Positions 226-49,222 of a DNA stretch of 64,000 nt are shown here, one piece after another. Source of the DNA: Botryllus schlosseri (lineage: Eukaryota); contig CM119378.1 of assembly GCA_051294905.1 (NCBI GenBank), positions 5,022,001 to 5,086,000 of the forward strand, read 5' to 3'. The position numbers and the translations under genes were made by a program. The number at the start of each line of letters is the position of its first letter. Within the stretch, counting starts at the first letter, position 1. Below the pieces are notes generated by a model, which saw only the letters and a program-made list of their open reading frames with translations, was not told the origin of the DNA and ran no database searches.

Positions 226-3200
226 CTGGGTTATGATCCCTTTGAATTCAGTATAAGTGAGAAAGTCGACTTGGAACCATGAAGTTTCTTGATCATTGTC
301 GTCTGGCTCCCATGCCCCATGGGCACCAACCGAAACTGGGCCTGTACATAAGGAATATGGAATTATTGCACCATCATTTTTCAATAAGAGACGCCCTTCA
401 ATATTCTTTAATTGAAATCCTGTTGAATATTTGAGATTCCAATCCAAGTGGAAACACAAATTTCGCAGCATATCTAAATCAAAGTCCAAAGCCAGTCAAT
501 CTCACTTTAATAGTTTTGACTCGTATCAAATTGAGTCATCTTCAATTCACCACCGAGTCAAGGTGCAAAGGTTGCAAGTTGTAGCTTTTAGTCCAAACAT
601 AGTGTTCAATACTGTTTAGTAGGGTTGTTCAAAAATAACATTTTTTTTTTGTCGGATTCGGAGGATTCACCGATTCAATTGTTATGTTACCTAAAATAAT
701 GCTGCACACCATATTTTGCTCAATTCCAACCAGTACAAACTGCGGCAGGGCCAATTGAAATTTTTAAATACATTAGAAAAATATTTTTTCAAGGTACTGT
801 CAACCCCGCGAAATTGTCAAATTGCCTAAGAAAAACAATGCATATCAAGTTTTTCTCATTTCACCAGTAGAAGCGAAGTTATTGCTGTTGAAAGTTTTGG
901 ATTTGCAAAAATATCTTTGAATGGCGGGTAATCCCAGAACTATTGATGAAAAAGTCAAATACCTTTGCTTCTACAGGTTGGAATTGCGTCAAATTTTTAC
1001 TGCATCGTTTTTGTAGACAACTCAACAATTTCGTGGGGTTGACAGTAAAAATTGTAAAAAAATTTTTTTTTTTTAATAAATCCAAAAATTCCAATTGCCT
1101 CTGCTACCGTGTATTTACTGGTTGGAATTGAGCTGAATTTGGTGATCAACATTTTTTAGGAAACTTTTAGGCAATTGCATATTCAAATCTAGTCCTAGAA
1201 TATTTAGTTTTTCTCTTGCTTGGAAACTACTACTTCTACTTGGTGTGAATTTATGTCGCTGGCGCTACATCTACTCAAGTACCGATGACGATTACTCGGG
1301 CCACCTCTACTCTTAACAGGGTTCTTCAAACAGATAAAGGAAGGTTTCTGGCCGAGTTTGTCTCCAGTCATATGAATTGGTAAAGTCATGCGCAGTGACT
1401 CGAGTACAAGTCGAGTCGATTCATTTCCATATTTAGGAAAATGACGTGAGTCAAGTCGAGTCACCGAAAAATCACAACTCAAGACGAGTCATTACAAACC
1501 TGAATTTTATGACAGAGTCCAAAACCAAATTAACTTTCATATCAATCTTAAATCCATATCCGATTAATATCCGTTATATTTTGATATCCAAATCCAAACC
1601 TAAGCTTATCTCCAACTCACGCCGCTCAGACACCAACCTGCGTCAACCACCACAACAGTGTCCTGCATGTTCAACCGTCCCCTGGTCGCGTTGAAATTCA
1701 CATCACGAAAGGACGACACGCTCAGAAAGCTGTCTGGGATGGCGCCTCCCTTCTCCACACCGAGATGTCTGAAGCAGCACGCCTCGTTGCTCCTGCATTC
1801 GCTCTGCGCCACATCAGTCCCGATGATGCTGTTACCCGTGTCTCCGATTTTTTCGCAAATAAAGTGACGCGTTCTGGCGCAACGGTCGTCGTTCCACCTC
1901 CCAGTGGCTAAGTAAAGCTCGGCGCAGTCCTCTTCTCCGGAGTTGTTTGGCTCGCCTGAACAGCAACATGGTTGGATGGTAATCATCTAGCTTAGTGCAG
2001 AGCCAAATCATGGCGCAGTCATGCTATAATCCAGCACAGGTAAGTTACAGCAAAAGAATACAGAGTCAAGTGAAAAGAAACATATAATTTGGCAATTACA
2101 ATTCGTTACACAGATAGAAAGAGAGAGATAAAGGATTTATTGATCACCGCAAAAATCCAAAAGCAGAATTCAAGTTTGCATGACACAAAAGATTGTTTTG
2201 ATGCAGTACACAAAAAGCTGTTCCTATAAGGAGCAAAATGAATATAGATAGATACATATGTGATAATAGTTACAGTAATACCTAGATAAAGCTGCATCGA
2301 AGTGATCTGGTGATTATTAAGTCTACTTCAGCTGTTAGGAGTAATCGGATATATATTGTGTACTTTGAAGCTATAACAGTGAATACTGTGGTGAATGTAA
2401 CATAATACAGCAAGTGCTGCGAAGGACTAGGCAAATCTTGAAATATATATGACTAAATAAATCTAGGGCAAAACATAAATATACGATGGACCAAGATAAA
2501 TAAAGAGTAACAGTTATGTAAAGAAACAAATCAATTTCAATGCAACTGTCAACACTATAATGCTCTACATCAGGGATGTGCAGACCTTTTGACAAGTGGC
2601 CCAGATTTAAAACAACGGTCCGCGTCCTCATGTTGGCTCCAGTATATTTTCTAGGCCCATCGTCTCATAAGAATTGCAACGGTGCTGGCGTAACTGACAT
2701 TAGAATCTGATACCCCACTTTATATAACATTTAGACTGGATGTTACTCAATAAATTTTGTCAATATATACAATTATACATGCGCATTGCGCAAAGTCCGC
2801 ATCCAAATTTTAGTTATTTCAATTTTCTCGTAGCCCACGTGTTTGGAGAAGGATAACATTTGTATAGATTTTCTCTACCTGACTCCCAATTGAGGTAATT
2901 GAAAGGACTTCCATCAGACCACGACCATCCGCCGTCATAGACATCAACTACATCGTCTTGCCAGGACATTTTGTCTGACGCACCGATCCATAGATTGGCA
3001 GCGAATCCCAGTTGTTGAGTCAAATCTAAATCGAAAGTGTATGCCAAATGCTTAACCAGTCAATATCGGGAAACTGGTTGATGTGTATTGCTGTAAAACA
3101 CACCATGAATGAATGCGTTCTCTTCGGGTGTATTTATCGATATCAAATCTCCCCCGTGATTCTGGCATTCTGCTCTTGCGTCATTCCATGTTCTTGTACG

Positions 3201-6200
3201 GCCCGCATCGACCTAGTAATTGAACAAATGCAACAGCTTCAAACATCTCGCCTGTACCGTGTCATAAAACCGAGTTGGTTGACAAAAGTACATGGATCAA
3301 AATTCGAATAGAGCGACACGATCTTTTCCAAATTAAATTAGAACGAGAATCACTGAATTCACAAAAACTTGAAAAATGAAAGAAATTTCAAATTAAAAAG
3401 AAATACAATAAAATCAAGTTCCGTTAAATCATATCTGCATTCATTCCCATGAGCATGAAAATGGCAATATCATTACCGTACACTAAGCTTGACTCGTTTC
3501 GCACTATACAGTTCTCTTGTAGCATTTTCAGGGCAACGAGAAATAAGATTAGAATTTATATTAGAGCAAAGAAACAGTCCACAAAGCAGATTAGAATTAG
3601 ATTACCGGCATTTCCTTCGAACTAGTTGCATAATAATTGTCTAGTTGTCCAAGACTGCTCGACAGATGCCTTTCAAATCGGAGACCAGAGGGAATGTCTC
3701 TAATTGACTCAATATAACGTCTAGCGGTGATGTATCAACAGAAAAAGATAGTTTGACTTTACAAAACAAATTCAATACCTTGTAGCAGCTGCTTGAAGAT
3801 GGGTTGGAAAACCATCCATTACCGCCACACTTTTCGTAGTCAGGATCTAAACATGAAGATGTCATCAATATTTCAAGGTTTATTAGCATCTACAGCGAAT
3901 AGGCTGCTTTGGCATGTCAGTAACAAAGTACTTCTACTTTCTCAACGTATTGAAGGCGGCTTTAGATAATTGAACTATTGACTACTTTTACACGAATATT
4001 TAACCCCCTCTGCGCTTTGGAAATAATCCGATTTTGTGAATATGCTTAATAGGCAAATATGCTGGTCTGAAAATATGGGAAAAGTTGATATGATACCATT
4101 CAATTGCAAATTGGCTGTGTGCAGACTTAGGAAGCTGTACAATGCTATTTCTGCGCCATTCTTGTCCAGCAGCATATGCACAACATGCACTCGTGGTGGC
4201 GATGCATATGCGATCATGTATATGCCACAAAAACAACACAGACAAAAATATAAAACGTACTATTCCTATAACTGTTACTGTAATCTTAGGGCTTAGATTG
4301 TTACATAAACACGGTATTTCTTACGTAAATCTGGAGGAGTCGGCGCGACCGGCGTGATTTCAACTGAAAAGAATACATAACTCATACAACTTTTTACTCA
4401 AGCACATGCATAATCGAGTTTGGCATACTTTCGTTCGTTTTACAGACAAAAGTATGATACTGGGAACACGAGTCATCCACCCATAAGCCCGAGTCTTCCT
4501 TAGCAAATACACACTGCTTGCTTTTTGTAGCACTGCTGTCCCAATTCACTATTTGAACTTCGTTTCCTGAATCAAGCCACGTATACTGTCCACCTTGATT
4601 TTCGAGTCCAATCCAGCTGTCCTGCTGCATATGTCCTGATAGCGAAAAGTGCAGCATGTGGTATTTGAATAATGGTTGAGGATTTGAAGAAATTCTTGGA
4701 GGTACCAGATATTAGCATACAATTGACTGGTGTATTCATATAGAAATGAAACCGAATATTTTATTCTGATACTGGTCAGGGTTAATCGGTAGCAACTAGT
4801 AGAGAATTGGAAAGAATATTGTATATCAACCATCGTATCACAAAATATGACTTTGCCCCGATTATTCAAAATATCATGTCGGTGACGTCATATTTCGTGA
4901 TACAATTGCTGATATAGAAAGTTCTTTCCAATTCTCTACTAGTTGCTGATGATAGCTCCTGACCAGTGTCGGCCGAAAATATTCCAGTTCAGTTCAATAT
5001 ATACTTATAGTATTCCGTTAAATAGAAAATTTATAAAGGAAAGCAGTATCAATAGAACAATTCCGGTAATAGTTTATTCAATTAAATCAATGGTTGAAAC
5101 CTGACTGGACTAGGAGTTGAATTGAAAATGAATCGACTTGACTCGAGTCAAAACTATATAAGTAAAATTCACTCATGAATCGGAACCTTGTGACTTGGTT
5201 ACAACCATGGGGGCGGACCCCTAAAGTTCTGAGTGGTTGTGTTGACCCCGAGACCGGACAGTTTGGGAAGCTAATCACTTCCACCCAGTGATAATTACTG
5301 TCTCATATTGCCATCTGGTCAAGTCGTTTCCCAAAAAGCTACCAGTTGACTAAAAAAACGAAAATATGATAAAGTAAGGATGTAAGTCAAAATATGGACA
5401 GATCTTATAAAGGACAGTGTTTTTATATTGTAGTTTTAACATCGGCCTTTCATGAACCCCTTAAAACTAATCCATGAACCCCAGGTTAAGAACCCCTGAA
5501 TAAATGAACATTTTTTTCAGCAAACATGATTGGAATTAGCTTGAATCCCATCTGTTACAATTACTTTTCCTTCTATCTTCAGTTGCCAACGATAGCTTAG
5601 TCATACCCATGGGATTACTTACCCACAATGAAGGACATTTCACCAGTCGACAAAACACTTGCCAATGTCGAAGGATGGTCTCTGTCCGATAGATTTTCAC
5701 AAAATACCTTAGCCTGTGACTGCGATTTTTCAGAGTTCCCAAAAAAGAAGCAATACCCGGTCTTGAACCATCGCCAGCCATCTTTACACTTTCCATCCAC
5801 TAGATGACGCCGTGAAAGGAATGGTTTAGTGGGGTGAACGCACAATTAGTCAATCAAGCCTAACGAAACATCAAGCCCATTAATTTAAAGTTGACATAAC
5901 CGACTCATTCAGCGATAAAACATAAGTGTCAACTCAACAAGTTTTATGCTAGGTTTGAAACTCGCGATTTGACATTGTAAATATACACAGTTACAGTAAA
6001 TATTGAACGATTAATTGACATGCATGAACAGCAACTGGGCCGGAGGTCGATATTGGCAAGGGTAGTCATCGAAAGTACTCTTGGTGAAAATTGAAATTGC
6101 AATTCAAGATGTGTTTGCCAGGCTGTATCACTTTGGAAATTACCAAAGAAAATGAGTGATGCGTAGAGTATTAACTTGAAGGGTTAGATTTCGATGCTTG

Positions 6201-9200
6201 ACACATTGTACATATCTCTCATTTCAATATTCTAGATGCTGTGTGTGTGATTGAAAGACTAGTGCAAGTCTTTTTGACTCTTTCCTATCTGGTCAGGGGT
6301 CATCGCTATCTAGTGATGTTATTAAATGATGAAAGTAATAATAAACTGAATCAAGTTTCCTTAAAAACAAAACGTGCTAAAAAATCAAACTTTCAAATTG
6401 CCTGTTAGGAGTGTACTGACAGGTACAATATTTCATGGTTTTAGAGTTTCTGAGATTCCTCTTATGTGAACATAGTAAATCAAGCCTTTTGAAGTACAGA
6501 AAGTCATAATCCAATCTAAATTGTAATCTGTGTGATGCTACGACGTAAACTGATGTCAAATGCATTTTATTCTCAACTTAATGTGAATAGGAAAGGTACT
6601 TGTTCTTCAAAAACTGTTGAAATGTTAGTAAATCAGTTGCACAGAAACTATATTGAACTCTCAGAAAAAGCATAACTGCTTTGCTAGTGATCACCACTTG
6701 AAAGTGATAAACTTACCGACTACAGGATCCAACTGCGGAAGCCTGGATCCTTCCGGCAGCTCACATATGAATTGACGTTCAAAAAAGCAGCTAGTTGTTT
6801 CCCAGTTATTGTGATCCGAACTGCCCGAATACATAGCCATGCAATCGTACTGATCTAAAAGCATCGTGAATTTCAGAAGACAATTTTCATACGAAAATTC
6901 ATATACCAATATTAATAGAAACTGCTATCATAAAACATGGATTTCAGTGCGCTCCAGAAGAGGAGCCTAATATACAAGATCAGTAGACTTGATGCTTTTT
7001 TGAAAAATATATCCAAGGGGAATAATTGAATGTTGATGTATTGCGAAAAGTGAAGGGGACAATCAAACTTGGTATTATTTGCGAAAATGTCTTACAAGAA
7101 TTTACGGTACCCAATGTGTTAGCACAAGCAGTACAAACATCTAGTTCAGCGGTTCCCAACTTTTTTCGACTCATATCCGCCTTATCAAGCTCAACACAAA
7201 TTTTTGCCACCCATATTTACCGATCTGAAAATGAGAAAATCTAAACGGGAAATTTATTCAATTAACTATGATCGCTGGTGAATTGACTAAAAATAGGTCA
7301 AGTTCTGTATCTTAAATAGTCTTTTCAGAGAATGATTTGTTAGTGGGAAATCAAACTGGTCAAATTTTTGTTCCTGTTAAGCGATCTGTTTGTTTTAAAG
7401 GCAATGCATTATTAGGGAATGCAGTTTTGCAGTGCTATAAATATGTTATCGCACATACCTTTAGTTGCTTTGGGCATATTGTCATCCCAGTACTTTATCG
7501 CCAGCGGTGTATTATCCCACCAAGTGAATGAATCATCGTGCCCAATATCAGACCCTCCAATCCAAATCAGATCAGCACCGGAATTATAATACTGCTCCAG
7601 GGCACCAGCCAGGTTGTCTTGCTGCTCTTTACTGTTAAGCACATCCAATACTTGATCATATATTATGCAAAAAAAAATGGTATGATTACGTTTCAATCTT
7701 CAATAGTCCGCCTCCTTCCAAATTGCAAGTCGCGAGAGCATTGGTCCAAGATGTTGCTCGATTAGGATTGACGATAAACTCGTAGCACTTGTCAGCAAGA
7801 AAAGTCCAGCCCGTGGGACATGTCGCTGAATTGAAAATTAGCATCATGAGAAGAGATACAAATTTCCGTCTTATGACAGGCTACATCTTGCGGCTAGTGT
7901 AAGTTTCTTGCGAGATGTGAAAAGAATATTCGACACCACAAATTGACACCATCCGCAATAGCTAATGTATGTTATGTGTATTATTTAGTAATATGAATCA
8001 TCAAATTCAACATCTCTATAGATTAGTGCAGTGCAACCTGTGGCCAGCCAAGAATTGCCAATTTATATGGCTTGCATGGCTTGTAAAATGGGTTACTGAG
8101 TCAGCTCAGTCTGGTAAGCTTGAGATTAGCTCATTTGGGCTAAGAGGCTGCACTAAAAGGCAATAAAATCACTGAAATATACTGACTTTGAATTTTTCGA
8201 CCAAATTTATTTGATACCCTGGCAAATATTTACGTAGTTTCTGAGAAAAGGAAAAAATCATAAATTACATAAAATATACATTTTGTTGTTTAAGGTGTTT
8301 CGAATCCATTAATGGAGAATTTTGGAGCATCAATTTCAACTTTTTTCAGCAATGTCAACCGAACAAGGGGTAAAACACGTTCGTTTGTGGATTGATGTTT
8401 CCGTCATTTCTAAACATCACAAGATTGCAATTGCAATACACTGTCAGATAGAAAGGAGACGGCATGACTTGGTGAAATTTATCAATCAAAATCAAATCAA
8501 ATAAACGTTATCATGAATAGTAAAAAAAACATGTTAAAACGAAGCATGAACAATGAATGAGAATAAAGAAACAACATCATAATTTGCAAGAATCAAGATG
8601 CACTCTATGCTGTGAGAAGTAAGGCGGCCATGGATTGGAAGTTTGGTAATCACCACTGTAGCGATGAACAATGTACCTTTGAAACCTTTCTCGCATATGA
8701 TGTTGTATTCGTTGGAGCATTTCACAAGATCCCATTTGTAATTATTATTTGGATCCATCACGGCACAGCTGCTTCCTTCGTATGGCGGGCTGAAATCAAG
8801 CCGCCATTACTAATAGACACTGTCCACCATGCACAAAAAATTCATGCAAATCTACCATTGTGAATTGAGTGGAAATTTTCATGAAACAACATGAGATTTT
8901 GATACGAAAACCACGTTCAGTAAACCTTACTCGTTTGGAGTGGCTGCCGACAGGAAGTTGCTGTAGGAATAGCTTTCAAATGTGCTCCATTGCAGATTGC
9001 CACCATCGGCCTACAATATATGTTGGTTTTTGATCAGAATCAGATTTCAGGCACAGTTCCAGGTCAGAACATGTGTAACTGCATATGTCTGTTGGTATGA
9101 GCTATATTACACCTTGTAGTACACATAGCTCATACAACCAGAACTAGGTTTCTCTATATTTACTGATTACTCGAGCGGCTATGATTTCTGTCTACTTCCA

Positions 9201-12200
9201 CTTTCAATTACATTTTTTTGATGCTAAACTACTCACTTTTACACTTGGGTTTTTGTAAAATAGAAAGTAGTTTGAGATCGGTTTCCAACATTTTTGTGAG
9301 TAAAATAAGAACAACCGTGCGAAATAACCCCTGTATCATGATAACATAATATATATTTGAAAACTGCCGTAAAAGTCAGGCTTATTTTGAAAATTGCTGT
9401 AATATAATCAGACTTATACAAACTACTCATATAGTTAATTGATGGTCAACTAACTAACGGTTTTTTGTGTAGTTCTAGTTCTTGCTGCAGATTTTGAAAA
9501 GTGAGCAGTTCTGGTTCTAGTTCTAGATGCGGATTTTGAAAAGTGAGCAGTTCTGGTTCTAGTTCTAGTTGCTGATTTTGAAAATTCAGTTGTTCTAGTT
9601 TCATATTTGAAAAATATATTAATTGCCGAACAACTAGAAAGCATGTGTTGTAGTTTTGCGTGAATCGAGATATCGGTGTTCTGTTGAATAACATCATGTG
9701 ACAAAATTTTACAAAAGTTTCAGTTGGCTATAATTTTTTATGTATAGTGTTTTAGTATTCCAATCGAATTACAAAAATATCAAAATTTTCCGCGAAGTGT
9801 CCCAAATTTTGAAGAAATGTCAATTTCTCTAATTTTTTATTTTACCCATATTTGCTCTGTATTAATCACAATAATTCTTTCTTGGAGGCAGGAAAATGCT
9901 AATGAAAAGGTTAATATGAACAAATATAGCTTACTCAATACTCATGCATCGAGTACCAAATCAACACTTTAAAAAACGTCAGAAGTGGTTTTGTTTGCGT
10001 GACTTGCGTCCGTAAAATGAGAAATCTTCTCTTCTTATGGACCAAAAATAACACCATGTAACAAAATTTTGCAAAATTTTATTTGAGTAAAGATTTTTAT
10101 GTATTGTGTTTTGCTATTCCAAACCACTCACTAAAATATTTCTAAAATTTCTTTTGGAGTGTTCCTAGTCTTAAGAAATGTCACTTTTTGTGATTTCTCG
10201 TTTTACTCTAAATTGCCCTGTAATAATACGCATAATTCCTTATTGAACGTACAAATCCACTAACAAAACGAAGGAATATGCACAAATGTGGCTCCCACAG
10301 ATTAAAAAGGATGGAAACACTTCAAAAATCTTCCGAATTGGGTTTGTTTGTATGATTTGGGTCTCTAGACTGAGAAATCTGCTGGTATTATGGAATACGT
10401 GAAAATCGTTCATACCCTTTTCTCGACGATGGACATCGTTCCCTAGTTTCAACCTTGGAGTCAGAATTTCCGCATTTAATTTAGTGATTCCCGACTAAAT
10501 CATCAAGTTCGTGTTGGTTACGAATGTGTGGTTTTGGATTTATATCTGTGAGATGTTGAAGTCGTCATCGGAGTAATTTTCTGTATCTTTAAGCCCTGTC
10601 GAGTCTTCTGGAGCTTTTTTGCCTGATAGTTGGGCAGTGAAAACCTACTGCAATACGGAACAGGTGCTCAAGAGTAGATGGCATAGAAGGATATACAATG
10701 ACAAGTCATTTTTTAGTTATTCTGAATCTTGGAATGTCACCCATACAGAAATTACAGTCATCTATAAGGTTTCGAATTTCCCTTCAGCTTCTTTAATAAC
10801 AAATGACATTGAATGCCGATCTCCCCTTAGCCATCCATCCATATTTCATCCGCATGTTTCGCAGATTACACGAAATGCTCAGTTTTTATCTTTGTCCCCA
10901 ATCTTCATGCCAATGTAAAGTTAATAAGTATAAAAACCTTACTTCTATATATATTTTATGCTTAACTTGTTTCAAACTGATACACACCCCGCAGATATAT
11001 CAAAATCAGCCAGCAAGCAGATTACATTTATGATGTTGAAATTAATAATGAGATTGTACTTACTAAATCCACAATCAGATCCACAATCAGAACAAAACGA
11101 AAAGGAATTTGAGATTGCTTGGTGTAGCCAATACCGACTGAGACGATGATTGTTGCTAACACCCAACTATTATAAATTGTTGATAGGAATTTCAATAAAG
11201 GAGTTTGTAAAACATGGTGCGGGCAGTTTAAAAAGCTTAAAATGACATTTTTAAACGACACTTGAGGCAAATAGATGCCAGAAACATGTTTTACTAAGGA
11301 ATGTGGTATAGGAAATACCAAAAAATCGGCTCAACTAAATTTTTGTTACATGGTGGAATGTTTCTGCAGCCATTGCTAGTTCATAGCCATCATTACTAAC
11401 TGTGGCGTAGCCAGCGGGTGGGTTTTTTGGGTTGAAATATCTCCCATTTCACACTCGAAACCCTGTCCTCTTCAAATGTCGATATAAAATAAAAACTAAT
11501 GGGTTGCCTAGCAGAATGAAATCCGGTTCAGTACGGTTCTTAACATTAAATGACTTGAGAACCCCTCTTCCTGAGTGTGACAATTATTTTTCTGAGATTC
11601 ACAAGAAAGTCAAAAGTTTGCACTATGTTCTGCAGTGTATTAATTTATAAACGTCGTTAGTTCTAGTTCTAGTTGCGGGTTTTGAAAAGTGAGTAGTTTT
11701 AGTTTTAGTAGCGTATTTTGAAAAGTGAGTAGTTCCAGTTATAGTTACAGTTTTAAAATTTGAGTGGTTCTAGTTCTAGTTAGTGTTGCGCCTTTTGAAA
11801 ATTCAGTAGTTTGCACAAGTCTGAATGTAGTGTAATCAGTCAGTTTGTATTGTGGGATGATGCATCTTGAAATTTCTCAAGTAGCCACTATCCATTTGAT
11901 ATTAATATGCAACACCTCGACTAAATCTAATTTTTATAAATATTTTATCAGTGTTATACTTCTACTTGAAGTAGCTTTGTCATGTATTTGAAATTGCTAC
12001 TCCTGCTTGTGATTATGTAAAAATTTACGGCATTACCACTGCTTCTACTTGACTAGCAGTGGTGAATACCTTGACCTCCTCCGGTCTAGTGTATCAGAGT
12101 CAAATTTACCGTGTCTGACAGTCCTATCCAGAAGTCTTCATAAATTCCAGTATTTTGGACCAGATTTTGTACGGTAATCTGTTCCTGCGAACTCGTAATG

Positions 12201-15200
12201 GAAGTTAGTCGTCCACCGTCTGTACTGAAAAATGAGTGCACTGCATATGAAAAATTGGGCAAAAGTAAATGTATCTTGAGAGAATGAGATGTTTTTTTGT
12301 AGGGAAATAGCACAATAATATAGAAATTGAATAATCACTTTGACCGGACAACAGCAAAATCATGTAGATGGGTTACAGGCTTGAAGAAACATAATAATTC
12401 AAGATAGATATAAAAATGAATTATTGAAGATCGAACGCCAGATAATATATTTCATGTTAAGAACTGCCAATGACACTGCACAGAGACAAATGAGATCACA
12501 ATTTTCAGTATAAACGTGTCAAAAAATTATCTCTAATTCATGAAGTTTGTAAAAAAAGTTGCAACCCTGATCACACATCAATTATTATGATTGTGTTGGT
12601 TCATCACACAACTATGCTTGGCACAATTTCTTTTGCAATAAATGAATCTTTGGATATTAAAACACCGAATCCACTTACCCGCAAAAAGCATTAGCTTCTT
12701 GCCACATGTACTTGGTTGTGAATGTTCTGTAACAGCTGGTACTACCCTTGGTCCAGCCACTCTCACAGCTTTGCACCCCCATATCTTGTAGAAAGTAGGA
12801 ACATTGAGTGGAAGTAAAGAAATTTGTATGTCCTTGTATATATGAAATCACCGCTATGAAATTTGAGTATAATCAGATAATTCTAACATCACAAACGTAA
12901 ACTATTGGTCCCAGCATGTAACACTGAGTGACAAGGAGTCAATTTCGTGTAGGCCGATAGTAAGCACAGCAGTGACAGCACCCCCTTCAAATTGTACCAG
13001 TCAGAATCCCAAGTGAAAATTGATACATCTATTATTATTATCACTGTGAGTTTTATTATTCTGTCATTAAGTAGCCAGTTACCTAACGAGCCTCTGCAGA
13101 CGAAATTATCAATTTTGTCACAGCTTGCATCATTCCACCTTCCTCTGTAAAGTGGGAGCTCCACCCACATGTTCGACGCAATCCTCTCCACCCGTATTAC
13201 TTGGCTCACTTGTTTCCAGAATCTATTAAAAAACATTAATTCAACAGGTGATACCGATGAACCGAGCATCACAGTGAGTCAAGGTTAAATCAGGAAATTA
13301 ATAGTTTGTAAGCTTGCATTGATATCAGGGATATCTAGGTTTCCGTGATTGATATATAATGTCACAAATTGTAACGCATCAAGATGAGAGAACAAAAATT
13401 GCAAATTTTCTTGGGCTTTGACATCATATGTGTACGTGGGGTGACCTCAATACCCCATGAAGTCTTCGCATGAAAATGAATTTGTTATCTCGCAATGAGC
13501 TTTGAAATACTAGCGCCATGATGAAAATGAGTTTGACATCATGGCATCGTGCATCCTTCTTAATTCAGTGGTACCGGCATAGGCGCCGACTTACGCGGTT
13601 ACGAGGTGGCGGCCACCTCGTACAAAATGCTCAAACGCCCAAGTGATTGTGACCAGTAATTGGTAATCAGGCGAATCGGATGCAACCTCGTTAGAGACGT
13701 CTTCGATTTCGATACGCGCGTGTGGCAGGCGCGTAGCCACGGGGGTTTCGGGGGTCGAACGCGAAACCCCGTCATTTTGAAATGATAATTCTAACTCTAA
13801 TATTCAGTTGCAATTCAATCATTGTGTTATCAGTGTTCCGCGCGGCCGAATTGAGAGAAACGTGTTGTCAATTCGCGAGAAGAGTCTACAACAGTGGTTC
13901 TTAACCTTGCCACCAGCGCCCCCCAGGGGGCGCTGGCGATCTTGAAGGGGGGCGGAAACGCTCAGGGGGCGATATGGGGGGCGCTGGGCTCAGGGGGGCG
14001 GTATGGGGGGCGCTGGAGAAAAATGGCTTCGCAGTAGATGATGTGGTGATAGGACATATCCTTAATGAGTATTCAGAGCAAATTAACACCGAAAACGTCG
14101 TTACATATAGCCTTCAAAATACATATAGGTTTGATTGTCCATGGGCGCTAAATGACTGACACCGAATGTTCCTGTCTTGGCAATCAGAACCCCAGAAGAC
14201 GAATTCCATCTGGCAGGGAAAAATTATATGTCAGTAAAGAAATATCAATCTGAAATCGTGTGCGTCTTTTAGTTTAGTACGATTGGGCGACAGGGATATT
14301 CCTGTTGGGCGATATCCCCGTTGAGCGATTCTATATATTTTGATATTGCAGACAGGGGGTCACGAAATAACATCATGCAACGAAGTCATACCAACGGCTT
14401 CGCCCGCCCGAATATGTTTAATTATTAGTAACGGGCCCTACAGTTTCCAAGAAACCTCACAATGTTCGCTTTAAGTTTTGATGAGTCTGCGCACACTCAA
14501 CAACTCACTGCGCTGACCCTTGGACAACAGTGCGTAACGACTGCAAAAAGATAATAACTCCGGATTTGTTGTGCGCAACGTAGATTTTCCGTATGCACAT
14601 ACCGTGTCAGCACTGCGCACGTGCGCAGCTCAGAGAGAACATTGCACCTCACTCAGCTCTACCGATAAATGTGTTTACGTGAGCAGAGAGAGGATAAAAA
14701 TTGATCTCAATTTACATGCAATTCCCGATGATATTGACCAATTCAATCATTAATTAGTGAAATTTTTCGCACTTTGCGCGAATAGGCGAGAATAGCTTCC
14801 TCAGTAAATGGACACCCAATGTAGATACCTAATAGGCTATCAGCAAATAGCGGACAGCCTAATGGGGGTCTGGGAGTGAAGTCCCCCGGAAGTTTGGTTT
14901 ATCACCCGATGGGGGCCCAGGACCAACGTTTTTAGTTTGGGGGGGGCTGACGAAGTGCTGTTACGGCCCTGGTAACGAATAATTGTACCTGCGGGCACGC
15001 CCGAATATGTTTAATTATTAATTACGTGCCCTTTATTTTCCTATACAACAGCTCACTCAGTGCTACTGGTAAATCTGATTACGTGGACTGAGAGGATAAA
15101 AAGTTTATATAGCGACTTATATATGTAATTACCAGTGTTGGGATGACTCGAGTCATGACTTGACTCGAGTCAGACTCGAGTCACCTTTTTCGTATGACTT

Positions 15201-18200
15201 GACTTGACTCGAGTCACTTTGCTAAAATGACTTGACTTGACTTGACTCGGCGTATCAGAAATGTGGATTGACTCGTGACTCGGAGCAAAATTCACGAGTC
15301 AATTTCAAGTCATCAAGTAAAGATGACTTTATCTTGCATATGTTCGGATTGTTTGCTAAACACTTGTGTAACCCATGAGAGCGACCGCTCATTCAATGAT
15401 CGTGCGTTTTACTGAGCCTCAAATATTCTCTCACAAATATATTGACCACAAACGAAGTGATCGAAGCTACAGCTTACTGTATTGCATCTTATCAATTCAT
15501 TTCTCGATTCTCTATCTCGGCTAGTAACTATAAAACGAGGTCATGCAATTACTTACGTAGTTTAACAGTTCTACGTATATGCGAGCGATACAGCCCCTTA
15601 TTGCATGTATATTTAACTCTATATTCGTTCATCGGTTCAAATTCAATGATCAATCAATCTGTTATTCAGACACCTAGCGAAATGCAATGACGTAATCATG
15701 CTTCATACTTCGAAAAGGCAACTTGACTTGAATTATGACTTGACTCGTGACTTGACTTGACTTGACTCGACTTGAGCCGAGTCACCTCCAAAAATCGAGT
15801 GACTTGACTTGACTCGAGTCACCTTCGAAAATCGATTGACTTGACTTGACTCGAGTCAAAATGTGCAATGACTCGAAATGACTCGTGACTCGAAGGTAGT
15901 GACTTGATCCCAACACTGGTAATTACCACCTATTCATTCATGCATTATGGAAAATTTTGGTACTTAGGGCGACCAGTACACACAAACTTTGCTGACCATC
16001 AAAATCACGATATGGGGTTCGTGGGGGCGAAGCCCTCAGAAGTTCGGTTTATCACGCTATGTGTGCGCAAGGCAATCGTTTTTAGGGGGGTTAACGAAGT
16101 GCTGTTACGGCCCTCCCTCTTACTCATTGTCTTTATTACATTCCTTACAATATGAAGTTGGGGGGGGGCGCTAGAGCACGATAATTTTGAAAGGGGGCGC
16201 TGGAAGAAAAAAGGTTAAGAACCACTGGTCTACAATGATCTCCCGCTGAGATGGTCGCGAAATTAGGTCATTCATTCCCATGCGCGTGGCAATCGTCGCT
16301 AGCCTGATTTATCGCGTCTCGAACAAGCCTGGTTCCGCGGCTTGAACATGAACAATCGCATCTGCAATAAGCCCAGTTCATGCTATATCATCGCTTGCCT
16401 GCGCAATCGCATCTGCATTGGCGGATTCGGCCTGGTGTGCACGATATCATCGCTGGCCTACACAATAGCCTCTGCAGTAGGGCTGGTGCGAAAGATGTCA
16501 TTGCTGGCCAATCATCGCGTCTCGGGCCTAGCATAATTCGGCTCCATCTCCCACTGGTTTGGAGACAATGCGGCCGAGTTTACGCTTATTAGTGATTGTT
16601 TTATGTCATCGATTAAAAAGCAACATCGCGAAACTGAATAACATCGAATCGCTGCAAAAAGACTTTAACGTGCGTAATTGATTATTCCCGCTAATACCAG
16701 TGGCGGCTCGTCCTATAGGGCAACTGGGGCATTGCCCCACCTAAAATTCTGTTCAATAACAGTTCTTTACCATTTATAGACGCACAGCAATCTATATATA
16801 CCGAAATCACAGCAAAAATCGTATTCTTCTTGTCCTTTCCCTTGTAAATGCCCATATATATAGCGAAGTCTCTGCGAAAATCGAATTCTCTTCGTGTTTT
16901 CGCTTTGCAAATGCCTAGCCGGGGCATGCCCCGGTAGCGCTCATAACAAGCTTTCACTGTCTATTCTCTCAAAGCTGCGCACAATAAAGAAACAGTGATT
17001 TACTCTCTCCTATTCATAAAATGACCGAGCAACCGGGGCAACATAGCCTACTCGCCCTTAAGGTGTGATGTAACAATCGTATCTACATCTGAACTCGGTT
17101 ACCGTCATATGCGTTTAGTCGACCTTTGCTGGTATAGGTCGATTTTGATGGTGTTTCACACAATGATAATTCTTGAAACTTGGTATGTCATGTCGTGATG
17201 GTGGTATTTAACATTGTCCCAAGTTTCAGGGTTTCTACTTAAAGTTTAGGGTAGTAATTCCGTTTCCGAAGTTGAGTGTGTGCTGATTCGTCATGTATCG
17301 CAAACAGATTTTACTCAAAAGCCGGTATTGGTATCCATTGATTTTGACGATGTTCCATACCGAGATCGGTCATGACATTTGGTACGGTAAGTCTTAATGT
17401 TAGTATTCAACGCGGTACCAAGTTTTAAGTTTGTCACTGTACTGTGTTAGTGGTAATTTCGTTTCCTAAATCGAGTGAGAGCTGACTCGTCATTTATCGC
17501 AAACATATTTTACGCAAAGCCGGTATTGGTCTCCATTGATTTTAACGATGCTCCTTACCTAGATCCGTCATGAGCTTTTGCATGGTATGTCTTGATTTTA
17601 GTATCGAACGCTGTGCCAAGTCTCACGGTTGGCACTCAATGATTAGGGCAACAATTTCGTTATCAAGGTCGAGATGTTAAAGATGTGCGCTGATCTGATA
17701 CTTAGCCTACCTAACGCATTGCGGATTTCACGCAAAAGTCGGCGTATCTGTGTTAACGCTAACTGTGTTCCATACTGAGATAAGTGATGAGATGATGATA
17801 TCATGAAACAGTTTACTAGCATCCTCGGTTTGCATTCAAATATTTACTTTTATTTTATATTCTCCAATGTCAATTTTGACCGTGAAATTGTGGCCTTCAG
17901 GCCATTTGCTTACAATTACAACCCCTGTCAAGCGCGATAGCTGTTTCGTTTTCGATGGCGGCTAACAGCTGATCGCTTGATCAATGATCAGCCTATTCCT
18001 CAGTAAATTTTACGCAAAATTCGGTGTTGGTCTGTTTGTATTAATTTTGACAGTGTACCATACCGAAAACGGTCATGAGGCTACTTCTCGTTGATTTCAT
18101 GTAACAGTGTACCAAGTTTTCGGCTTTCATCCACGTATTTATTCGGTAATATATTTTCCAAAGGCGATTTTGCAGCAGACATATAGACCGTAAGCCGTAT

Positions 18201-21200
18201 GTGTCGTGTGACAGTCTCCAGCACCAAGGCCAAAACATCTCCTATGCTGTATCGGGACCGAATTTCCGAGGCTGCTATCCGTAGTTCTTCAGAATTATGT
18301 TTTGGATTCAATATGACATTGTCCAATCTATGAGATAACAATTGCGTATGTGTCCGAACTCGTTGACCTTTCCAGCTAGGCTTACGCTTGGGCTTACGCA
18401 ATCTCTCGAGTTATAGTCATTTCCATTTCTGCAGATAATTAGTCAAGTCAGGTATAGTGCGAACATGAGCCGTGTGAAATCTTTGTTCCGTACGCCGTTT
18501 ACGCAGTTACCACACTTCAAGTCACAGCTCACCGGCAGACCTCTCGCGGCACATACGTTAAATCACTGTTGTCGGGAAGTTCGTGTTACCGTAGTTCGTA
18601 CCACTAAGTTACTTGTTTACGTTGGAAAACTCCATTGTGACGTCATCTTGATAAAAAGTCGCTTGCAGCCCTTGCCCCACCACCCGATATTGTCACGAGC
18701 CGCCACTGGCTAATACTACAATGTAACGATCAGAAGATGTGTATCATGGCTTGAGTTATGGAAGACAACATAGGTTTGAAATCGGTGCCATCAAGTTCGG
18801 ACATTTTGATTTGCGAAAACTGTCGCCGAGACTGCGTAATACGCGCGCGTATTTAATTGTTCGCCAGGGATCAGGGACTCGTTAATTGACAGCCCTCCCG
18901 GACTCTTTGGCAAGCTTATCGTACGCCTAAAATCGTCAATACGAAAAGATTATATGATCGTCATTTACACATGTATTTGACCAGAATTGAATTGATGCTA
19001 TATTGGTAAATTTGAAAAAAAAATCTAAATCCCGCTATTTCGTTACACACGGCGCATTGCGCGTGAATAACATTAGTGCAACTCCAGATTCTGATTTTTG
19101 TTCGATGCATTCCATCAGACGGATTGGTTGCGTAGTTACTCTTTCGAATGATCGTACCGTCTTAAGATTCCATTTAATAACTCGACTGTATGGTTTGATA
19201 TTAGTGAGTGCAGGGCCTATATTAAAACGTCGTGCGAATGGTTTAACGCCAGCGGCATGTAGTAAAGTGCGTTTTAGTGCGACGATGATGTCATCGATAT
19301 GGAACAATTATGACGTCACAAGACTTCGCCACCTCGCAAAAAAAGATAAGTCGGCGCCTATGGGTCCGGTTATAGGGCTGGGCACAATGATTCGAGTACT
19401 CGAATCTGAATCGAGTATTAATTTCAATGATTCGAGTCGAGTAGTAAAAGACGATTTTTTCGAGTACTGACATTATACGCTCCTCGCAACTGAAAGTTAA
19501 TTTACTAACGAGAATTATAGTTTTGAAACTATTTTCCACTGAGGAAGCCTTGAAACCTTGATTAGCCGTGTCGCATCATACGAGACATAGTACAAAGCTA
19601 CGAACGTTACTGGATATAACGCACTTACGAAGTCCCACAACATTGTCACCAAGTGCAATGAAATCGGTATTATCGAAAAAATACCGAAGTATCTTTAATG
19701 TGACGGATAACAGGCATTATGTTATATGTGGTGGCATAAAAGGAACATATTTGAACTTTGATATAGTATATTCTGTTGTGACGTCATAATGTGTGATACT
19801 CGAATACTCGACTCGACTCGATGCGTAATACGTGATTCAGAATCGAATCACTCAGGTACTCGATTTTGCCCAGCCCTAGTCCGGTATATCATTAGTTCCA
19901 ACTGACATTAAGTGATCAGTATCTACCTACGACACAAACAGATTTAATGGATTAGTCCTATTGAGCAAGTGATCAGTGCATATTGATAGCATAGGTTGAC
20001 CAAACAATTTGAACATTAGCCATTTCAGACTGGACATTTAGGACATTAACATTGTGATGTGATTGCTGCTATTTCATTGCGGATTAGGATAGGACTTGTG
20101 ATGGATTTAGTGTTTGGTTGGGGCTTGGGTTAAGATCAGTGATACCTTTCTGCAATACGAGATCGGGGATTACACGCCTCCCCCGTGCTCGTGATGACAA
20201 GTCTGTACGTTGTTGTTGTTTGTGGTATTCATGGTTTGTCGACCACTATGGTCATTTGCACCAAGCCAATTCTCTTCATTTTTATTTCTTAGCTGCCGAC
20301 TTGTAGCACGGCCCACTTCTAGACACCGCTTACATGGATGAGACGCGAGAAGGAGCCTAGATAAACCTCCAGCTCTTAGGTAGGAATTCTAGAGTCGACC
20401 TCGGTTGGACTCGAACCCGTAACCCATCGGTGTTGCAGCTACGGATTATAAACTATTAGTACGCTATCTCGCTAGTCGTCACTCACGTCTGTACGTGGCG
20501 AGTGTCCGAATTAATCGTGATTACATTTATTTCGTTTGGTGGAACTTGAGCTTTGAACACATAGGGGGACAACATAGCTGTAGATAACTAAGGTTTACCT
20601 TAGTTACCTATAATATAACGATTGCGATGGGAATGCCCTACGACATGAGATAAGAAATTTCTTTTTGAATGTGACGTCATTTATGTGGTACGTCACAAGT
20701 GATCCAAGATTCACATTCTAGCCTCAAACCAACAGCAACATGTTGTACAAGCGGATGACTGACGGCAGATTCAAATGTTGGATAAAGAATTACTAAATAA
20801 CGATTAGTGCGCGTTTTAAGTAGGGCCATAGGAGAATATGATAAAGCGAAAATGAAATTCATCCATAACGTTACTCTTTTAGTTGATCACTGGCATACCT
20901 ACAATCCACCAAATACGGATATTACGAGCGTCCGTTGGTAGTAACGGCAAGAACAGCTCAGTCATGATTTAAATCAGCAGTCCTTCATTTTTATTGATTT
21001 GATGTGGCAGTCGACATGTTTTATTTAGCGAGCATAGAATTTTAAATCTTTGTACGCATGTACGACGTACGTACGTACGTATAATGTACAGTACATACTC
21101 CCCCGATTAAAGCTGCTTTCATACCGCATTTAACTAAGCATAACCAAACACCATGGTGGTGATTGTCATCCTCTGCGAAGTAGTGGTGTGTGTTGTGCTG

Positions 21201-24200
21201 ATACACGGCATGGCGGCACCTATATACCAGGGTTGTAATGACTCGAGTCATGACTCGACTCGAGTCAGACTCGAGTCACGATTTTATGATGACTCGACTT
21301 GACTCGAGTTATTTTCTCAAAATAAGGAAATGACTCGACTCGACTCGAGTCAATCTGTGTATTGACTCGACTTGGACTCGAGTCATTGCGCATGACTCGA
21401 ACCAAGTTATATGACTCGAGACACAGAAGGCCAATACCGATATTTTATCGTAATTTCGAAGATTAGTAATATTAACCACCCCATTGAGATTTCGTTTATT
21501 GGTACTAGTACGTGAAAATGCGATCAGAACTTGCTAAAAGTGAGGAAAATTACTATATTATGAATGCGAACCATTCAAATCACCAAACAGAGTTATAAAA
21601 AGTGAGTTTAACAAAATATTAGCTGGAAACTGGGCAGTCAACATATTGACATGGAGTCGGACTCGAGTCATAATAGCATGATTCGGACTCGACCCTCTGA
21701 TCGATGACTTGGACTCGGACTTGACTCGGTGGTGAGTTGAAAATGACTCGACTTGACTCGAGTCAAAATTATAAAAGTGAAATTGACTTGTGACTCGGAG
21801 CCTTGTGACTTGGTTACAACCCTGCTATATACTCCTACACTACATCGGTATCTCTTCTTACCGCGTGTGCATAATTCGTTGCGCAATGATGAGCACAGCA
21901 CATGTGATTAATAGGCAGTGGAGTTCAAAAATCTGACATTTTACGACCTAACTTTATATAACGTATACTATATTCCTTGTTCACTAATGTTCATGTTCAG
22001 TTCATCACATAGACCCCGTTAAAGTAAGGAGTAGCGTTGGGACCCCGGGATCCCGGGATTTGAAGCAATCCCGATCCCGGGATTTGAAGCAATCCCGATC
22101 TCGGGATTAGCCCCAATTAAATCCCGGGATTTGTGAACAGCATCTACCAGGGCTTACGTAGCGTCATGTGTCATTTTTTGGTAATAAAGCAGTGTCAAAA
22201 CTAGACAGGTTGTCTAAAACATTGTTTCTTAACCTTACGTCCCTGCAGCGCCCCTTTTCGAAAATGGCCTACGTCTGACGCCCCCGCCCATATTTCAAGG
22301 ATATTTCGCCAACAAATTACGAAACCGTCTAAGCGATGATACTCTTTATCAGTGATTCCTAGCCAATATGAATGTCGGAGCCACATTTCAAACTTCATAG
22401 TATACGCAGGGAGCCGCATTAAAACACCCTATTAGACTATATACTGATTCTAAAGGTATCTGATAACCTACCTCTGAATCTCAGCATCTAGCAAACTCAA
22501 AAGCATGCACATGCACACAGACTTTTAAAGATTGTATATCTGTTATTCTAGCATTGGTAGACGCAGATTGGCAAGTGCTATACATTGAAATAAATTGAAA
22601 ATGCATATCATTACTCAACATACTATTTTGTCGTTATGTGATAACTCTTCATACATTCCAGCACATGATACACAAGTTTGCAGAGGATTATTCTATGAAA
22701 AATATTGGACTTATTGCAATTTTTACTTGACTATGAGCCGTTATTTTAATGTTAGTGAAATTGTGTCGGAACTTACTCTTCAAAAAGACGATATATAAAG
22801 GTCTACGACAGGGTACGTTGTAACCAAGTCACAACACTGTAAAAAATAACCGTGGGTTTTGGGGTGGAATAGGAGTGGATAGGAATAATCCACCGTAATG
22901 CTGGAGTGTACCTTTTTGTTCCACCCCGTTTTAGAGTGGAATAGGCGTGGATTGTTGCTCCTACCCCTGCATTACGGTGGATGACATCCTGCCACCCTGG
23001 ATTAAGCATGGTACGGCGACCCCACCGCTGATCAATTGAGGAAACCAATATGTTTCCGCTACGATCATTCCAATCACCTGTGCTGTATAGTGTATATGTA
23101 CGCGCGAGATGCTTGCACGGACTGACAGACATATCATTTATCGATACAGAGAGAGCGGGAGTGATAGAATATTCATCGGTCAGCCGTGCAAATCAGCACC
23201 ATTAAAGAGGAATTGAATGAGTTAAAGGAATATATAATAGTTTGTTCATTTCAAAATTAAGCAGTGAGCTTATATCAGGAAATCGCAACATCGTTTTTGT
23301 TTTAAACTCACAATAACTCACAAACTTATACAATGAAATTCAGGCGATATACCGATCTACCGTATAAAGTTTGATCTAAAATTCTAATATGGTTGTGCGC
23401 GGTATCGAGATAATATTATTCCATGTTACCGTATGCAACGCCTTAGGTATTTGCGCGGCGATCCCACGAAATCAGCTGTGTTTTCGCGGGAACCAAATTT
23501 AGGCGGCAAAGCCCTTTCAACCACCGAGTTTTATAAACACAGATGAGCTAATGGTTCGACTTACATCTTACCATCATATTCGATCAATTTCTAGTCTGAA
23601 CTCAATAATGATAGGTATAATATGCATTTAGTGAATGTAGGAAGCGGCACGCACACAAAGCGAAGATACTAATATCTGATGCTGACTGATCAACCGGGTC
23701 GGTTACGCTTTAGTGACTCAGCAATCGAGGTTAGAAAGCGAGAAGCGGAATGCGTAAGCTGAAGATCGAAGGGGAAAGATCGCGAATATGTCTTTCAGTT
23801 TTACTATGAGGCGAATTTCTTATCCTCACTGCACAGGGCAATAGCTGTACGCTTTAGAATATGAGTCCGGTTCATCCTGTTAAGGGATGCGTTATGAACG
23901 CATTCTATTCTCGCTGGCCTATACGGGTTACGCGTTACGGTATGTGCTCTATTGTTTCTGACAGTCGGACGCCATATTGGATATTACGTTACGTGAAGAA
24001 AGGGAAGGTGAGACGACAATGCACTCATAATTGTATTTTGCATGCTTCTAATCTGCCTTTTCAAATTTGCACTGGAGTTGAAGTCATTGAGTCAGATTTG
24101 TTCGGTTGTAATTATATAGTTGATAACAACTTCTTGTTATTAACAAGAAGTTACTGCAATTCAATGTCCTTTTCTAGTATGAAACCATGCTGGTATATCC

Positions 24201-34571: not shown

Positions 34572-35324
34572 CTTGACTAATTATACGGATGTTCCGGAAG
34601 TATCGACGACTGTATGCTATGAAATCAACTATTTGTCATCCATCCATAGATGGATCGTCAACTCGGAATGATCCTGTATACCGTATGAGCAGGGGTATAG
34701 TTACGGCGGAATTTTCCTGTAAATAAATGTTTACAGCGCAACAAGCGCTAATCGTACCGCCCAAACATTGCAGTGTTAAACCAACACATGACGTTAGCAG
34801 GAATTTAGATAATATAAGGCACATTTGTATTTGCATTGTTTGCGTTTCATCGTGTAACACTTCATTAATAAGTGAACTAATCAACGTGAATGCATGTGAT
34901 TAAAATGATTTCATAACGTGGAAAGAGCGGTATTCGCAAAACGATTATTACTCAATAATAAAGTTTACTTTGGCTGAAGATTTTCCGTCCTGCCGCTATT
35001 CCAGATTACGTAAATCGTTATTTAGTCTTCGGAATGAGATTTGTGATATTTGAAAGTCGCTTCACTCTGAATTTTCTTGGTTCGAAATCGATTTTATTTA
35101 GCTTTTCTTGAGCAATATAACTCAACTATTGAGGAGACTTATATTATACTGTTATGTGTCATTATATTGTACAAGGATCACTAGCTGAAGCACCACACCA
35201 ATCAGTGAATATGACACGGAGTAGCATAAAGTAAATATGCCAACTAGTCATATCGGTAAATATGCTAGGGTGGTACAGGTACCTTGCATATGCAACGACA
35301 CTCTGCAAGGTACATTCGACAACG
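34572..35324. promoter_or_regulatory. 753-bp interval between divergent start codons (lectin A and GH gene); candidate shared promoter region
   Basis: Only the ATG positions and opposite orientations are seen; no specific cis-element identified. Confidence 0.4.
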
Positions 35325-47542: not shown

Positions 47543-47993
47543 ATGAAATATTTGACTCTGATTTCACTGTTGATGATCACTCTAGTTCTCGCTGATTCTT
47601 CTCATGGCGGGTGGTGGCGCAGAAAAAGGGGATGCAGGGGTGGCCGATGTCCTGTTGGGAGACCGCGTGGCCAAAAAGTCAGAGTAAGAACGCAAAGAAT
47701 GATTCAAACTTTAACATTTTATTGAATAATTTTTTTTTTCTAGGATGTCGACTTCGGTAAGTGTATTTTCAAGTGTATTAGAAGTTATTAGATATTAGAA
47801 GATATTTGGTCCTTTTAAACTGTAGAGTGACACGGAGCATATTTTACAGACGAATTCGTATCTATGTTCGGCATGGACGCAGCTGGTAAGAGATTGATTT
47901 GAAATCAATTCTTCGTTAATTAGATGAAACACTTTCTTACAACATTCGGAATTAATTACAGAAGCAATGCTGCAAGAAATGAACACTGAATGA
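47543..47993 (+). CDS. Putative antimicrobial peptide precursor (signal + cationic peptide + anionic propeptide), 73 aa
   Basis: Exons 47543-47683, 47744-47756, 47850-47885, 47962-47993 with donors AGA|gtaaga, TCG|gtaagt, CTG|gtaaga. Product MKYLTLISLLMITLVLADSSHG-GWWRRKRGCRGGRCPVGRPRGQKVR-DVDFDEFVSMFGMDAAEAMLQEMNTE*. AATAAA at 48071-48076. Confidence 0.8.
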
Positions 47994-48156
47994 CTTCGTT
48001 GAAGATCGAAGATCACAAAAGACCGTTATCGAAAATATATTCAGATTCACCGTGACTGTTGAGTTACTCAAATAAAAACTCGAAATACTCAATTTTTGTA
48101 CTGAATTCAGCTGCATAGAACAAAGTAACCTAGGTATCAACGTGTAGCACAGAATA

Positions 48157-48157
<1 letters not shown>

Positions 48158-48197
<40 letters not shown>
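48158..48197. repeat. (CT)n microsatellite, about 165 bp downstream of the AMP-like gene stop
   Basis: Directly visible. Confidence 0.95.

Positions 48198-48198
<1 letters not shown>

Positions 48199-49178: not shown

Positions 49179-49179
<1 letters not shown>

Positions 49180-49219: not shown

Positions 49220-49222
<3 letters not shown>

What the first reader, a model, noticed from the sequence alone, without database searches (positions are those of the whole stretch)
13170..13211. Compensated double frameshift rewrites the Ca2+/sugar-binding loop of CTLD1 in lectin A
Seen: paralog B reads FWKQ-GEPSHTGGEDCVE-MW, while paralog A reads FWKQ-VSQVIRVERIASN-MW in the through-frame. The alternative frame of the same A bases (GT GAG CCA AGT AAT ACG GGT GGA GAG GAT TGC GTC GAA C) still encodes (G)EPSNTGGEDCVE. 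A 1-nt deletion and a 1-nt insertion about 38 nt apart therefore swap 13 residues and leave the exon at 140 nt. Known: the EPx motif and this Cys are the carbohydrate-site and disulfide residues of CTLDs. Inference: either a recent event that disables or repurposes one domain while keeping the rest of the receptor in frame, or two assembly errors.
Basis: partly seen in the sequence, partly recalled or inferred. Interest (0 to 1): 0.7.

Follow-up and report, generated by a model that had tools for sequence, protein, structure and literature searches.

The report
Frame-restoring indel pair in lectin domain
One of two old sea-squirt sugar-receptor gene copies has lost one base and gained one 38 bases later, so 13 amino acids of its first sugar-binding loop are rewritten while the rest of the long protein stays readable; the change is very young and is either a real mutation pair or two assembly slips.

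Summary
Gene A (minus strand) and gene B (plus strand) are head-to-head paralogs of an ascidian multi-CTLD mosaic protein. The first 11 of their 13 mapped exons have identical lengths.

In A's exon 4 (13083-13222, 140 nt, as in B) one G is missing next to 13209 and one extra base sits at 13171. Codons 13209-13171 therefore read VSQVIRVERIASN where B has GEPSHTGGEDCVE.

The abandoned frame of A still spells EPSNTGGEDCVE. Nine of its ten base differences from B fall on that frame's third codon positions, although A and B are saturated at silent sites. The rest of A's CTLD1 has not evolved faster than B's, and A is otherwise intact: signal peptide, GT-AG splice sites and an open frame over at least 17 exons.

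So the shift is very young or not real. Either indel alone gives a premature stop, so the pair fits the known class of compensatory frameshifting mutations (Biba et al. 2022).

No reads, transcripts or orthologous copies of this exon could be reached. I put a real, young, possibly still polymorphic allele at about 0.6 and two consensus errors at about 0.33. If real, CTLD1 loses three Ca2+ ligands and one core disulfide. Interest is modest.

The parts
13171..13209 (-). The 13 frame-shifted codons (GTG...AAC), which read VSQVIRVERIASN. The old frame inside them reads EPSNTGGEDCVE.
13209..13210 (-). Site of the 1-nt loss. The Gly codon GGN of the W-K-Q-G-E-P motif is reduced to G-T.
   Evidence: Alignment to B
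13171..13173 (-). Site of the 1-nt gain: GAA-C-ATG where B has GAG-ATG. It can be read as an inserted C or as a doubled A.
13083..13222 (-). Gene A exon 4 (140 nt), the third and last coding exon of CTLD1. Acceptor ttttaatag|A, donor G|gtaact.
13223..33282 (-). Gene A intron 3, about 20 kb, holding the transposon nest. The matching intron of B is 148 nt.
33283..33404 (-). Gene A exon 3 (CTLD1 middle, with the WIGM motif).
34220..34380 (-). Gene A exon 2 (start of CTLD1).
34514..34571 (-). Gene A exon 1: ATG plus signal peptide MKRYCLVFTIFLGLASTKL.
4429..12784 (-). Gene A exons 5-13 (CTLD2-4): 12784-12679, 12224-12110, 9010-8931, 8789-8677, 7825-7690, 7631-7459, 6854-6717, 5799-5623, 4635-4429. 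All are open, and all have GT-AG borders.
226..3844 (-). Further gene A exons (CTLD5 and the start of a discoidin-like domain), colinear with the Styela clava homolog. The gene runs off the window.
58418..58557 (+). Gene B exon 4, the canonical counterpart (GEPSHTGGEDCVE).
53869..63667 (+). Gene B exons 1-13, head-to-head with A. The gene runs off the window.

Best explanation
Gene A is an intact member of an ancient paralog pair that encodes an ascidian secreted or membrane multi-CTLD mosaic protein. On the sequenced haplotype, exon 4 carries a real pair of mutually compensatory frameshifting mutations: a 1-nt deletion in the Gly codon before the EPS motif, and a 1-nt insertion 38 nt downstream. 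Either change alone gives a premature stop, which would presumably make a null allele. The -1 alone runs into the TAG formed by the last three bases of the exon. The +1 alone stops 14 codons later. The second change restored the frame for the remaining protein, which is about 2,500 residues in the Styela homolog. The cost is 13 rewritten residues. CTLD1 thereby loses the Glu and Ser of the EPS motif, the following Glu and the beta-3 cysteine, so it can no longer form the canonical Ca2+ site 2 or the inner disulfide. That leaves the WNDxxC cysteine unpaired. The event is very young relative to the A/B duplication, and may be segregating or only recently fixed. What is shown: the sequence, the gene models, the conservation of the old frame and the integrity of the rest of A. 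What is inferred: that the bases are real, that the domain has lost sugar binding, and the order of the two indels.
For: The -1/+1 geometry is exact and exon length is unchanged. The old frame is conserved at 11 of 12 residues against B, with 9 of 10 base differences at its third positions. By contrast A and B overall are 65% identical and differ at 58% of third positions. Outside the block, A's CTLD1 shows no rate acceleration: 6 A-unique against 5 B-unique changes with the Styela outgroup, and 4 against 5 with Ciona. A has a start codon, a signal peptide, 13 GT-AG exons matching B in length and phase, and open downstream exons. So there is something for frame restoration to rescue. Each single indel gives a stop. 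If two indels were placed at random in 1,726 nt of CDS, the chance that they fall within 38 nt and also cancel is about 2% (my calculation). That argues against independent errors or neutral decay. The class is documented, including a 1-bp deletion plus 1-bp insertion 32 nt apart in NCR3LG1 (PMC8935012).
Against: No independent sequence of this exon was obtainable, whether reads, transcripts, a second assembly or an ortholog. In the published survey, 624 candidate genes shrank to 6 after quality filters, most candidates were seen in a single species, and the authors name sequencing, assembly and alignment errors as the main noise. Real pairs tend to lie in poorly conserved regions (section heading), whereas this one hits the best-conserved loop of the domain. 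The perfect preservation of the old frame is also exactly what an artefact would give.
Confidence: 0.6

Rival explanations
1. The two indels are consensus or polishing errors of the assembly. The real gene A then encodes the canonical loop FWKQ-G-EPSNTGGEDCVE-MW, and nothing biological has happened.
For: The old frame is intact and selectively conserved, and the rest of the domain is under normal constraint. Both are what an error predicts. Both sites can be read as length changes of very short runs (GG to G, A to AA). The published survey found that most single-species candidates fail quality filters.
Against: Two independent errors that land 38 nt apart and cancel have a chance of about 2%, given two errors in this CDS. 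No other frame break occurs in about 3.4 kb of A and B coding sequence or in the downstream exons. Neither site is a long homopolymer, where long-read errors concentrate. No gap or N lies nearby. Correlated local errors cannot be excluded.
Confidence: 0.33
2. Gene A is a decaying pseudogene, perhaps crippled by the 20-kb transposon-filled intron 3, and the two indels are neutral lesions that cancel by chance.
For: Intron 3 has grown from about 150 nt in B to about 20 kb in A. The donor of exon 2 is weak (GTTTGA).
Against: There are no other stops, frameshifts or lost splice sites in at least 17 exons. There is no excess of A-specific amino-acid changes. Random placement and cancellation of two indels has a chance of about 2%.
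Confidence: 0.04
3. The exon is rescued at the RNA level, by a cryptic splice site or an alternative copy of the exon, so the rewritten loop is never translated.
For: The deletion site reads CAA|GTGAGC, which looks like a donor, and CTTTACAG|A lies downstream. Another lectin gene in this genome was noted to use mutually exclusive exons.
Against: The internal GT...AG interval is 65 nt, and removing it runs into a stop (FWKQ-RKVE*). No second copy of this exon exists anywhere in the window, even at E <= 50. Skipping the 140-nt exon would shift the frame.
Confidence: 0.02

Closest known systems
[quoted passage not shown]
   Same: Two 1-nt indels of opposite sign lie less than 100 nt apart in one lineage, with no stop between them and a radically different peptide in between. 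The geometry nearly matches the high-confidence human NCR3LG1 case (1-bp deletion then 1-bp insertion, 32 nt apart).
   Different: It is seen in a single assembly only, with no mRNA, protein or second-species support. It lies in a highly conserved functional loop, not in a weakly conserved region or near a gene end.
Canonical Ca2+-dependent C-type lectin domains (Pfam PF00059; e.g. selectins, collectins, mannose-binding protein)
   Same: Gene B's domain and the old frame of A carry W-x-x-G-E-P-S, G-E-D-C-V-E and W-N-D-x-x-C. B exon 4 aligns over residues 2-45 with P-selectin, collectin placenta 1 and mannose-binding protein A.
   Different: A's through-frame matches only the last beta-strands (Pfam profile positions 88-106; PDB alignments from residue 24 on). 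It lacks the EPx motif, the following Glu and the beta-3 Cys.
Styela clava LOC120344952 (2,497 aa) and Ciona intestinalis LOC100176392 (2,666 aa), unnamed multi-CTLD mosaic proteins
   Same: They are colinear with A and B from the signal peptide through CTLD1-5 into a discoidin-type domain, at 40-50% identity per exon. Both have the canonical GEP(N/S) loop in CTLD1, and Styela also has the EDC cysteine in its usual place.
   Different: They are co-orthologs from other genera, not the same gene. They say nothing about the state of this exon in the present species.
Vertebrate macrophage mannose receptor family (MRC1, MRC2, PLA2R1, LY75)
   Same: Many tandem CTLDs in one chain, of which only some keep sugar-binding residues. 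Automatic annotation names distant relatives 'macrophage mannose receptor 1-like'.
   Different: A and B start with a CTLD directly after the signal peptide, with no N-terminal ricin-type Cys-rich domain and no FNII before the CTLDs. The Styela homolog adds discoidin, LCCL, trefoil, kringle and Link domains.

Membership tests
Compensatory frameshifting mutation pair (pCFM) | Two indels, each not divisible by 3, whose lengths sum to a multiple of 3 | tested here: met
   A has -1 beside 13209 and +1 at 13171. The exon is 140 nt in both paralogs.
Compensatory frameshifting mutation pair (pCFM) | Short shifted segment (<100 nt) with no stop codon, and the original frame resumed downstream | tested here: met
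   13 codons are shifted. MWVELPLYRGRWND... is then identical in frame to B.
Compensatory frameshifting mutation pair (pCFM) | Ancestral state is the unshifted frame (polarity) | tested here: met
   B, Styela and Ciona all have GEP(N/S) at this place, and B and Styela also have EDC. A's old frame spells EPSNTGGEDCVE.
Compensatory frameshifting mutation pair (pCFM) | Derived state confirmed by independent data (reads, mRNA, protein, or more than one individual or species) | not testable with these tools
   The protein collection has no match to the exon ORF. Metagenome DNA has no match. Exact look-ups of neighbouring ORFs are empty.
C-type lectin-like domain (PF00059), for A's CTLD1 as now encoded | WIGL-type motif and WND motif | tested here: met
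   WWIGMTD is in exon 3 and RWNDASC in exon 4. Exon 3 matches Lectin_C at 20.6 bits, just below Pfam's 22.6-bit cut-off.
C-type lectin-like domain (PF00059), for A's CTLD1 as now encoded | Four core cysteines forming two disulfides (alpha1-beta5 and beta3-loop after beta4) | tested here: not met
   The beta-3 Cys (EDC in B and in A's old frame) is replaced in the through-frame. The other three remain.
Ca2+-dependent carbohydrate-recognition domain (mannose/galactose-type CRD) | EPN/EPS or QPD motif plus the downstream Glu and WND as Ca2+ site 2 ligands | tested here: not met
   The through-frame has VSQVIRVERIASN in place of GEPSxTGGEDCVE. Pfam and PDB alignments start only after the block. 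B meets this feature.
Vertebrate mannose receptor family | N-terminal ricin-type Cys-rich domain and an FNII domain preceding the CTLD array | tested here: not met
   In A and B the signal peptide is followed directly by CTLD1. The Styela homolog has a different domain set.

The most novel reading that the evidence does not exclude
The indel pair is real and fixed in the species. Selection then kept a first lectin domain whose sugar/Ca2+ loop was replaced in one step by an unrelated 13-residue peptide with a freed cysteine. That would be a frameshift-born new binding or cross-linking surface on a conserved immune-type receptor, in one of the most conserved parts of the fold.
Probability: 0.1. 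Interest if true: 0.55.

Novelty: new member of a known kind. Interest (0 to 1): 0.3.

Why it matters
If real, this is a clean and very young example of frame restoration. A null allele of a very long receptor gene (about 2,500 residues in the Styela homolog) would have been rescued at the price of one domain's canonical sugar site. Such pairs are known but rarely verified, and they usually sit in weakly conserved sequence. A case in the Ca2+/sugar loop of a CTLD, with an unaltered paralog 19 kb away as an internal control, would be a convenient test of how much rewriting the fold tolerates. If it is an artefact, it marks a local consensus problem in the assembly that would put a wrong protein into annotation.

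Tried and rejected
1. I searched the protein collection with the 127-aa genomic ORF over exon 4 and found no hit.

2. Two profile searches were seeded with a long homolog plus A/B exon translations, to reach long or transcript-derived proteins. The first returned only generic multi-CTLD proteins from other phyla plus the Styela and Ciona homologs. The second scored nothing, probably because the fragment alignment left too few profile columns. That second search was in effect wasted.

3. The representative search with exon 10 found no long protein closer than about 46% identity. This species' proteins are therefore not in the library.

4. Two metagenome DNA scans gave no match.

5. Exact look-ups of two ATG-started ORFs over A and B exons are not on record.

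6. Logan contigs L001 and L002 come from other ascidians or are old paralogs. They cover exons 9-13 only and are equidistant from A and B.

7. A self-comparison of the window for near-identical repeats, meant to gauge the indel error rate, found too few repeats.

8. Cryptic-intron and alternative-exon rescues are rejected by the sequence.

10. A literature search for the two SRA run numbers found nothing.

Full report
**What is in the sequence.** The feature lies on the minus strand. Window 13221-13084 translates to FWKQ-VSQVIRVERIASN-MWVELPLYRGRWNDASCDKIDNFVCRGSL. The adjacent frame reads ...SEPSNTGGEDCVE and then runs into a stop.

A plus-strand paralog at 58418-58557 reads FWKQ-GEPSHTGGEDCVE-MWVELPLYRGRWNDRSC.... 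The DNA alignment of the two exons needs exactly two 1-nt gaps:
- A lacks one G of the Gly codon, beside 13209.
- A has one extra base before the ATG, at 13171. This can equally be read as a doubled A at 13172/13173.

Both exons are 140 nt, and the shifted stretch is 13 codons, 13209-13171.

**Gene context.** By comparing the two halves of the window I built both gene models.
- Gene A runs on the minus strand from an ATG at 34571, with signal peptide MKRYCLVFTIFLGLASTKL, through 13 exons to 4429.
- Gene B runs on the plus strand from 53869 through 13 exons to 63667.
- The first 11 exons have identical lengths (58, 161, 122, 140, 106, 115, 80, 113, 136, 173, 138 nt), and the last two differ by 3 nt. 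All intron phases match.
- Every A intron is GT-AG.
- Both reading frames are open and encode four CTLDs. The proteins are 65% identical.

The frameshifted exon is exon 4, the last of three exons that encode CTLD1. Its two partner exons lie about 20 kb upstream (34380-34220 and 33404-33283), because A's intron 3 has swollen to 20,060 nt. The same intron is 148 nt in B.

Downstream, A continues colinearly with its Styela homolog through CTLD5 into a discoidin-like domain and leaves the window. The two start codons face away from each other, 19 kb apart.

**Family.** A search of 1.8 billion cluster representatives with exon 10 found no long protein closer than about 46% identity. The best colinear relatives are:
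- Styela clava LOC120344952, 2,497 aa, with Lectin_C, F5/8C, LCCL, trefoil, kringle, FN2 and Link domains;
- Ciona intestinalis LOC100176392.

In a four-way alignment, B and Styela have W-K-x-G-E-P-(S/N)...E-D-C-V-E at this position. Ciona has G-E-P-S with the cysteine displaced by one residue.

Pfam matches B's exon 4 to Lectin_C profile positions 73-106 (23.6 bits). A's through-frame matches only positions 88-106 (13.6 bits). Against solved structures, B's exon aligns over residues 2-45 with P-selectin, collectin placenta 1 and mannose-binding protein A. A's aligns only from residue 24.

From textbook CTLD structure, the replaced residues are the Glu and Ser/Asn of the EPx motif, the next Glu (all ligands of Ca2+ site 2) and the beta-3 cysteine, which pairs with the Cys of WNDxxC.

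**How old is the shift?** In the abandoned frame, A and B compare over 12 codons as 3 identical, 8 synonymous and 1 non-synonymous. Nine of the 10 base differences are at third positions (binomial P about 3.6e-4).

Over the whole CDS the paralogs differ at 58% of third positions, which is saturation, and dN is 0.24. So for nearly all of the time since the duplication this stretch of A was selected in the old frame. With at most one change in 24 first and second positions, my Poisson bound puts the age of the shift below roughly 0.2 neutral substitutions per site (0.4 if the new frame is itself constrained). The total A-B distance is above 1.

The rest of A's CTLD1 shows no acceleration: 6 A-unique against 5 B-unique changes with the Styela outgroup, and 4 against 5 with Ciona. 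The event is therefore recent, or it is not real.

**Mechanism.**
- The -1 alone would read on to the TAG formed by the last three bases of the exon.
- The +1 alone stops 14 codons later.

Either change would presumably give a null allele of a very long protein. Together they cost only 13 residues.

This is the documented class of pairs of compensatory frameshifting mutations (PMC8935012). That paper models such pairs as arising when a second indel hits a low-frequency frameshift allele. One of its six high-confidence cases, NCR3LG1, has the same layout: a 1-bp deletion followed by a 1-bp insertion 32 nt later.

**Real or artefact?** In favour of a real allele:
- If two indels fell at random in 1,726 nt of CDS, the chance that they lie within 38 nt and cancel is about 2%.
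- No other frame break occurs in either gene.
- Neither site is a long homopolymer.
- Gene A is otherwise intact, so frame restoration would be favoured by selection.

In favour of an artefact:
- The old frame is perfectly preserved.
- The hit is in the most conserved loop, whereas published pairs favour weakly conserved regions.
- In the published survey 624 candidates fell to 6 after filtering, with sequencing and assembly errors named as the main noise.

I could reach no independent copy of these bases. My estimates are real 0.6, assembly error 0.33, pseudogene decay 0.04 and RNA-level rescue 0.02.

RNA-level rescue is contradicted by the sequence. The internal GT...AG interval is 65 nt and its removal leads to a stop. 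No second copy of the exon exists in the window.

**Verdict.** This is a candidate new member of a known kind of event. It is of modest interest until reads or transcripts show that it is real.

Noticed in passing
window 13223-33282 (minus) versus 58270-58417 (plus): The same intron (intron 3, inside CTLD1) is about 20 kb in gene A and 148 nt in gene B. The expansion holds the transposon nest that another reader noted at 22032-30700.
   Followed up: partly
window 59241-59242: Gene B intron 6 seems to use a GC donor (ACG|GCAAGT), where gene A has ACG|GTAAAT. It is the only non-GT donor among the 24 mapped introns.
   Followed up: no
window 53927-57263: Gene B's signal-peptide exon (53869-53926) is separated from exon 2 by an intron that contains the MITE/LINE insertion at 53979-57024. 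The inverted ends at 53979-54209 and 56793-57024 are 96% identical.
   Followed up: partly
window 34571-53869: Genes A and B are arranged head to head, with their start codons 19.3 kb apart. The small cationic-peptide gene noted at 47543-47993 lies between them.
   Followed up: no
window 34214-34219: The donor of gene A exon 2 is weak (AGG|GTTTGA), compared with AGG|GTAAAA in B.
   Followed up: no
L001 (Logan contig SRR23343704_269351), 1-1764: A related ascidian, or an old third paralog, packs the counterparts of exons 9-12 into 1.7 kb with very short introns. It is about equally distant from A and B (63-75% amino-acid identity to A).
   Followed up: partly
window 1822-1959 (minus): CTLD5 of gene A keeps a full mannose-type site (GEPNNSGEEDCAELY...RWNDDRC), so the protein retains canonical lectin domains elsewhere.
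   Followed up: no
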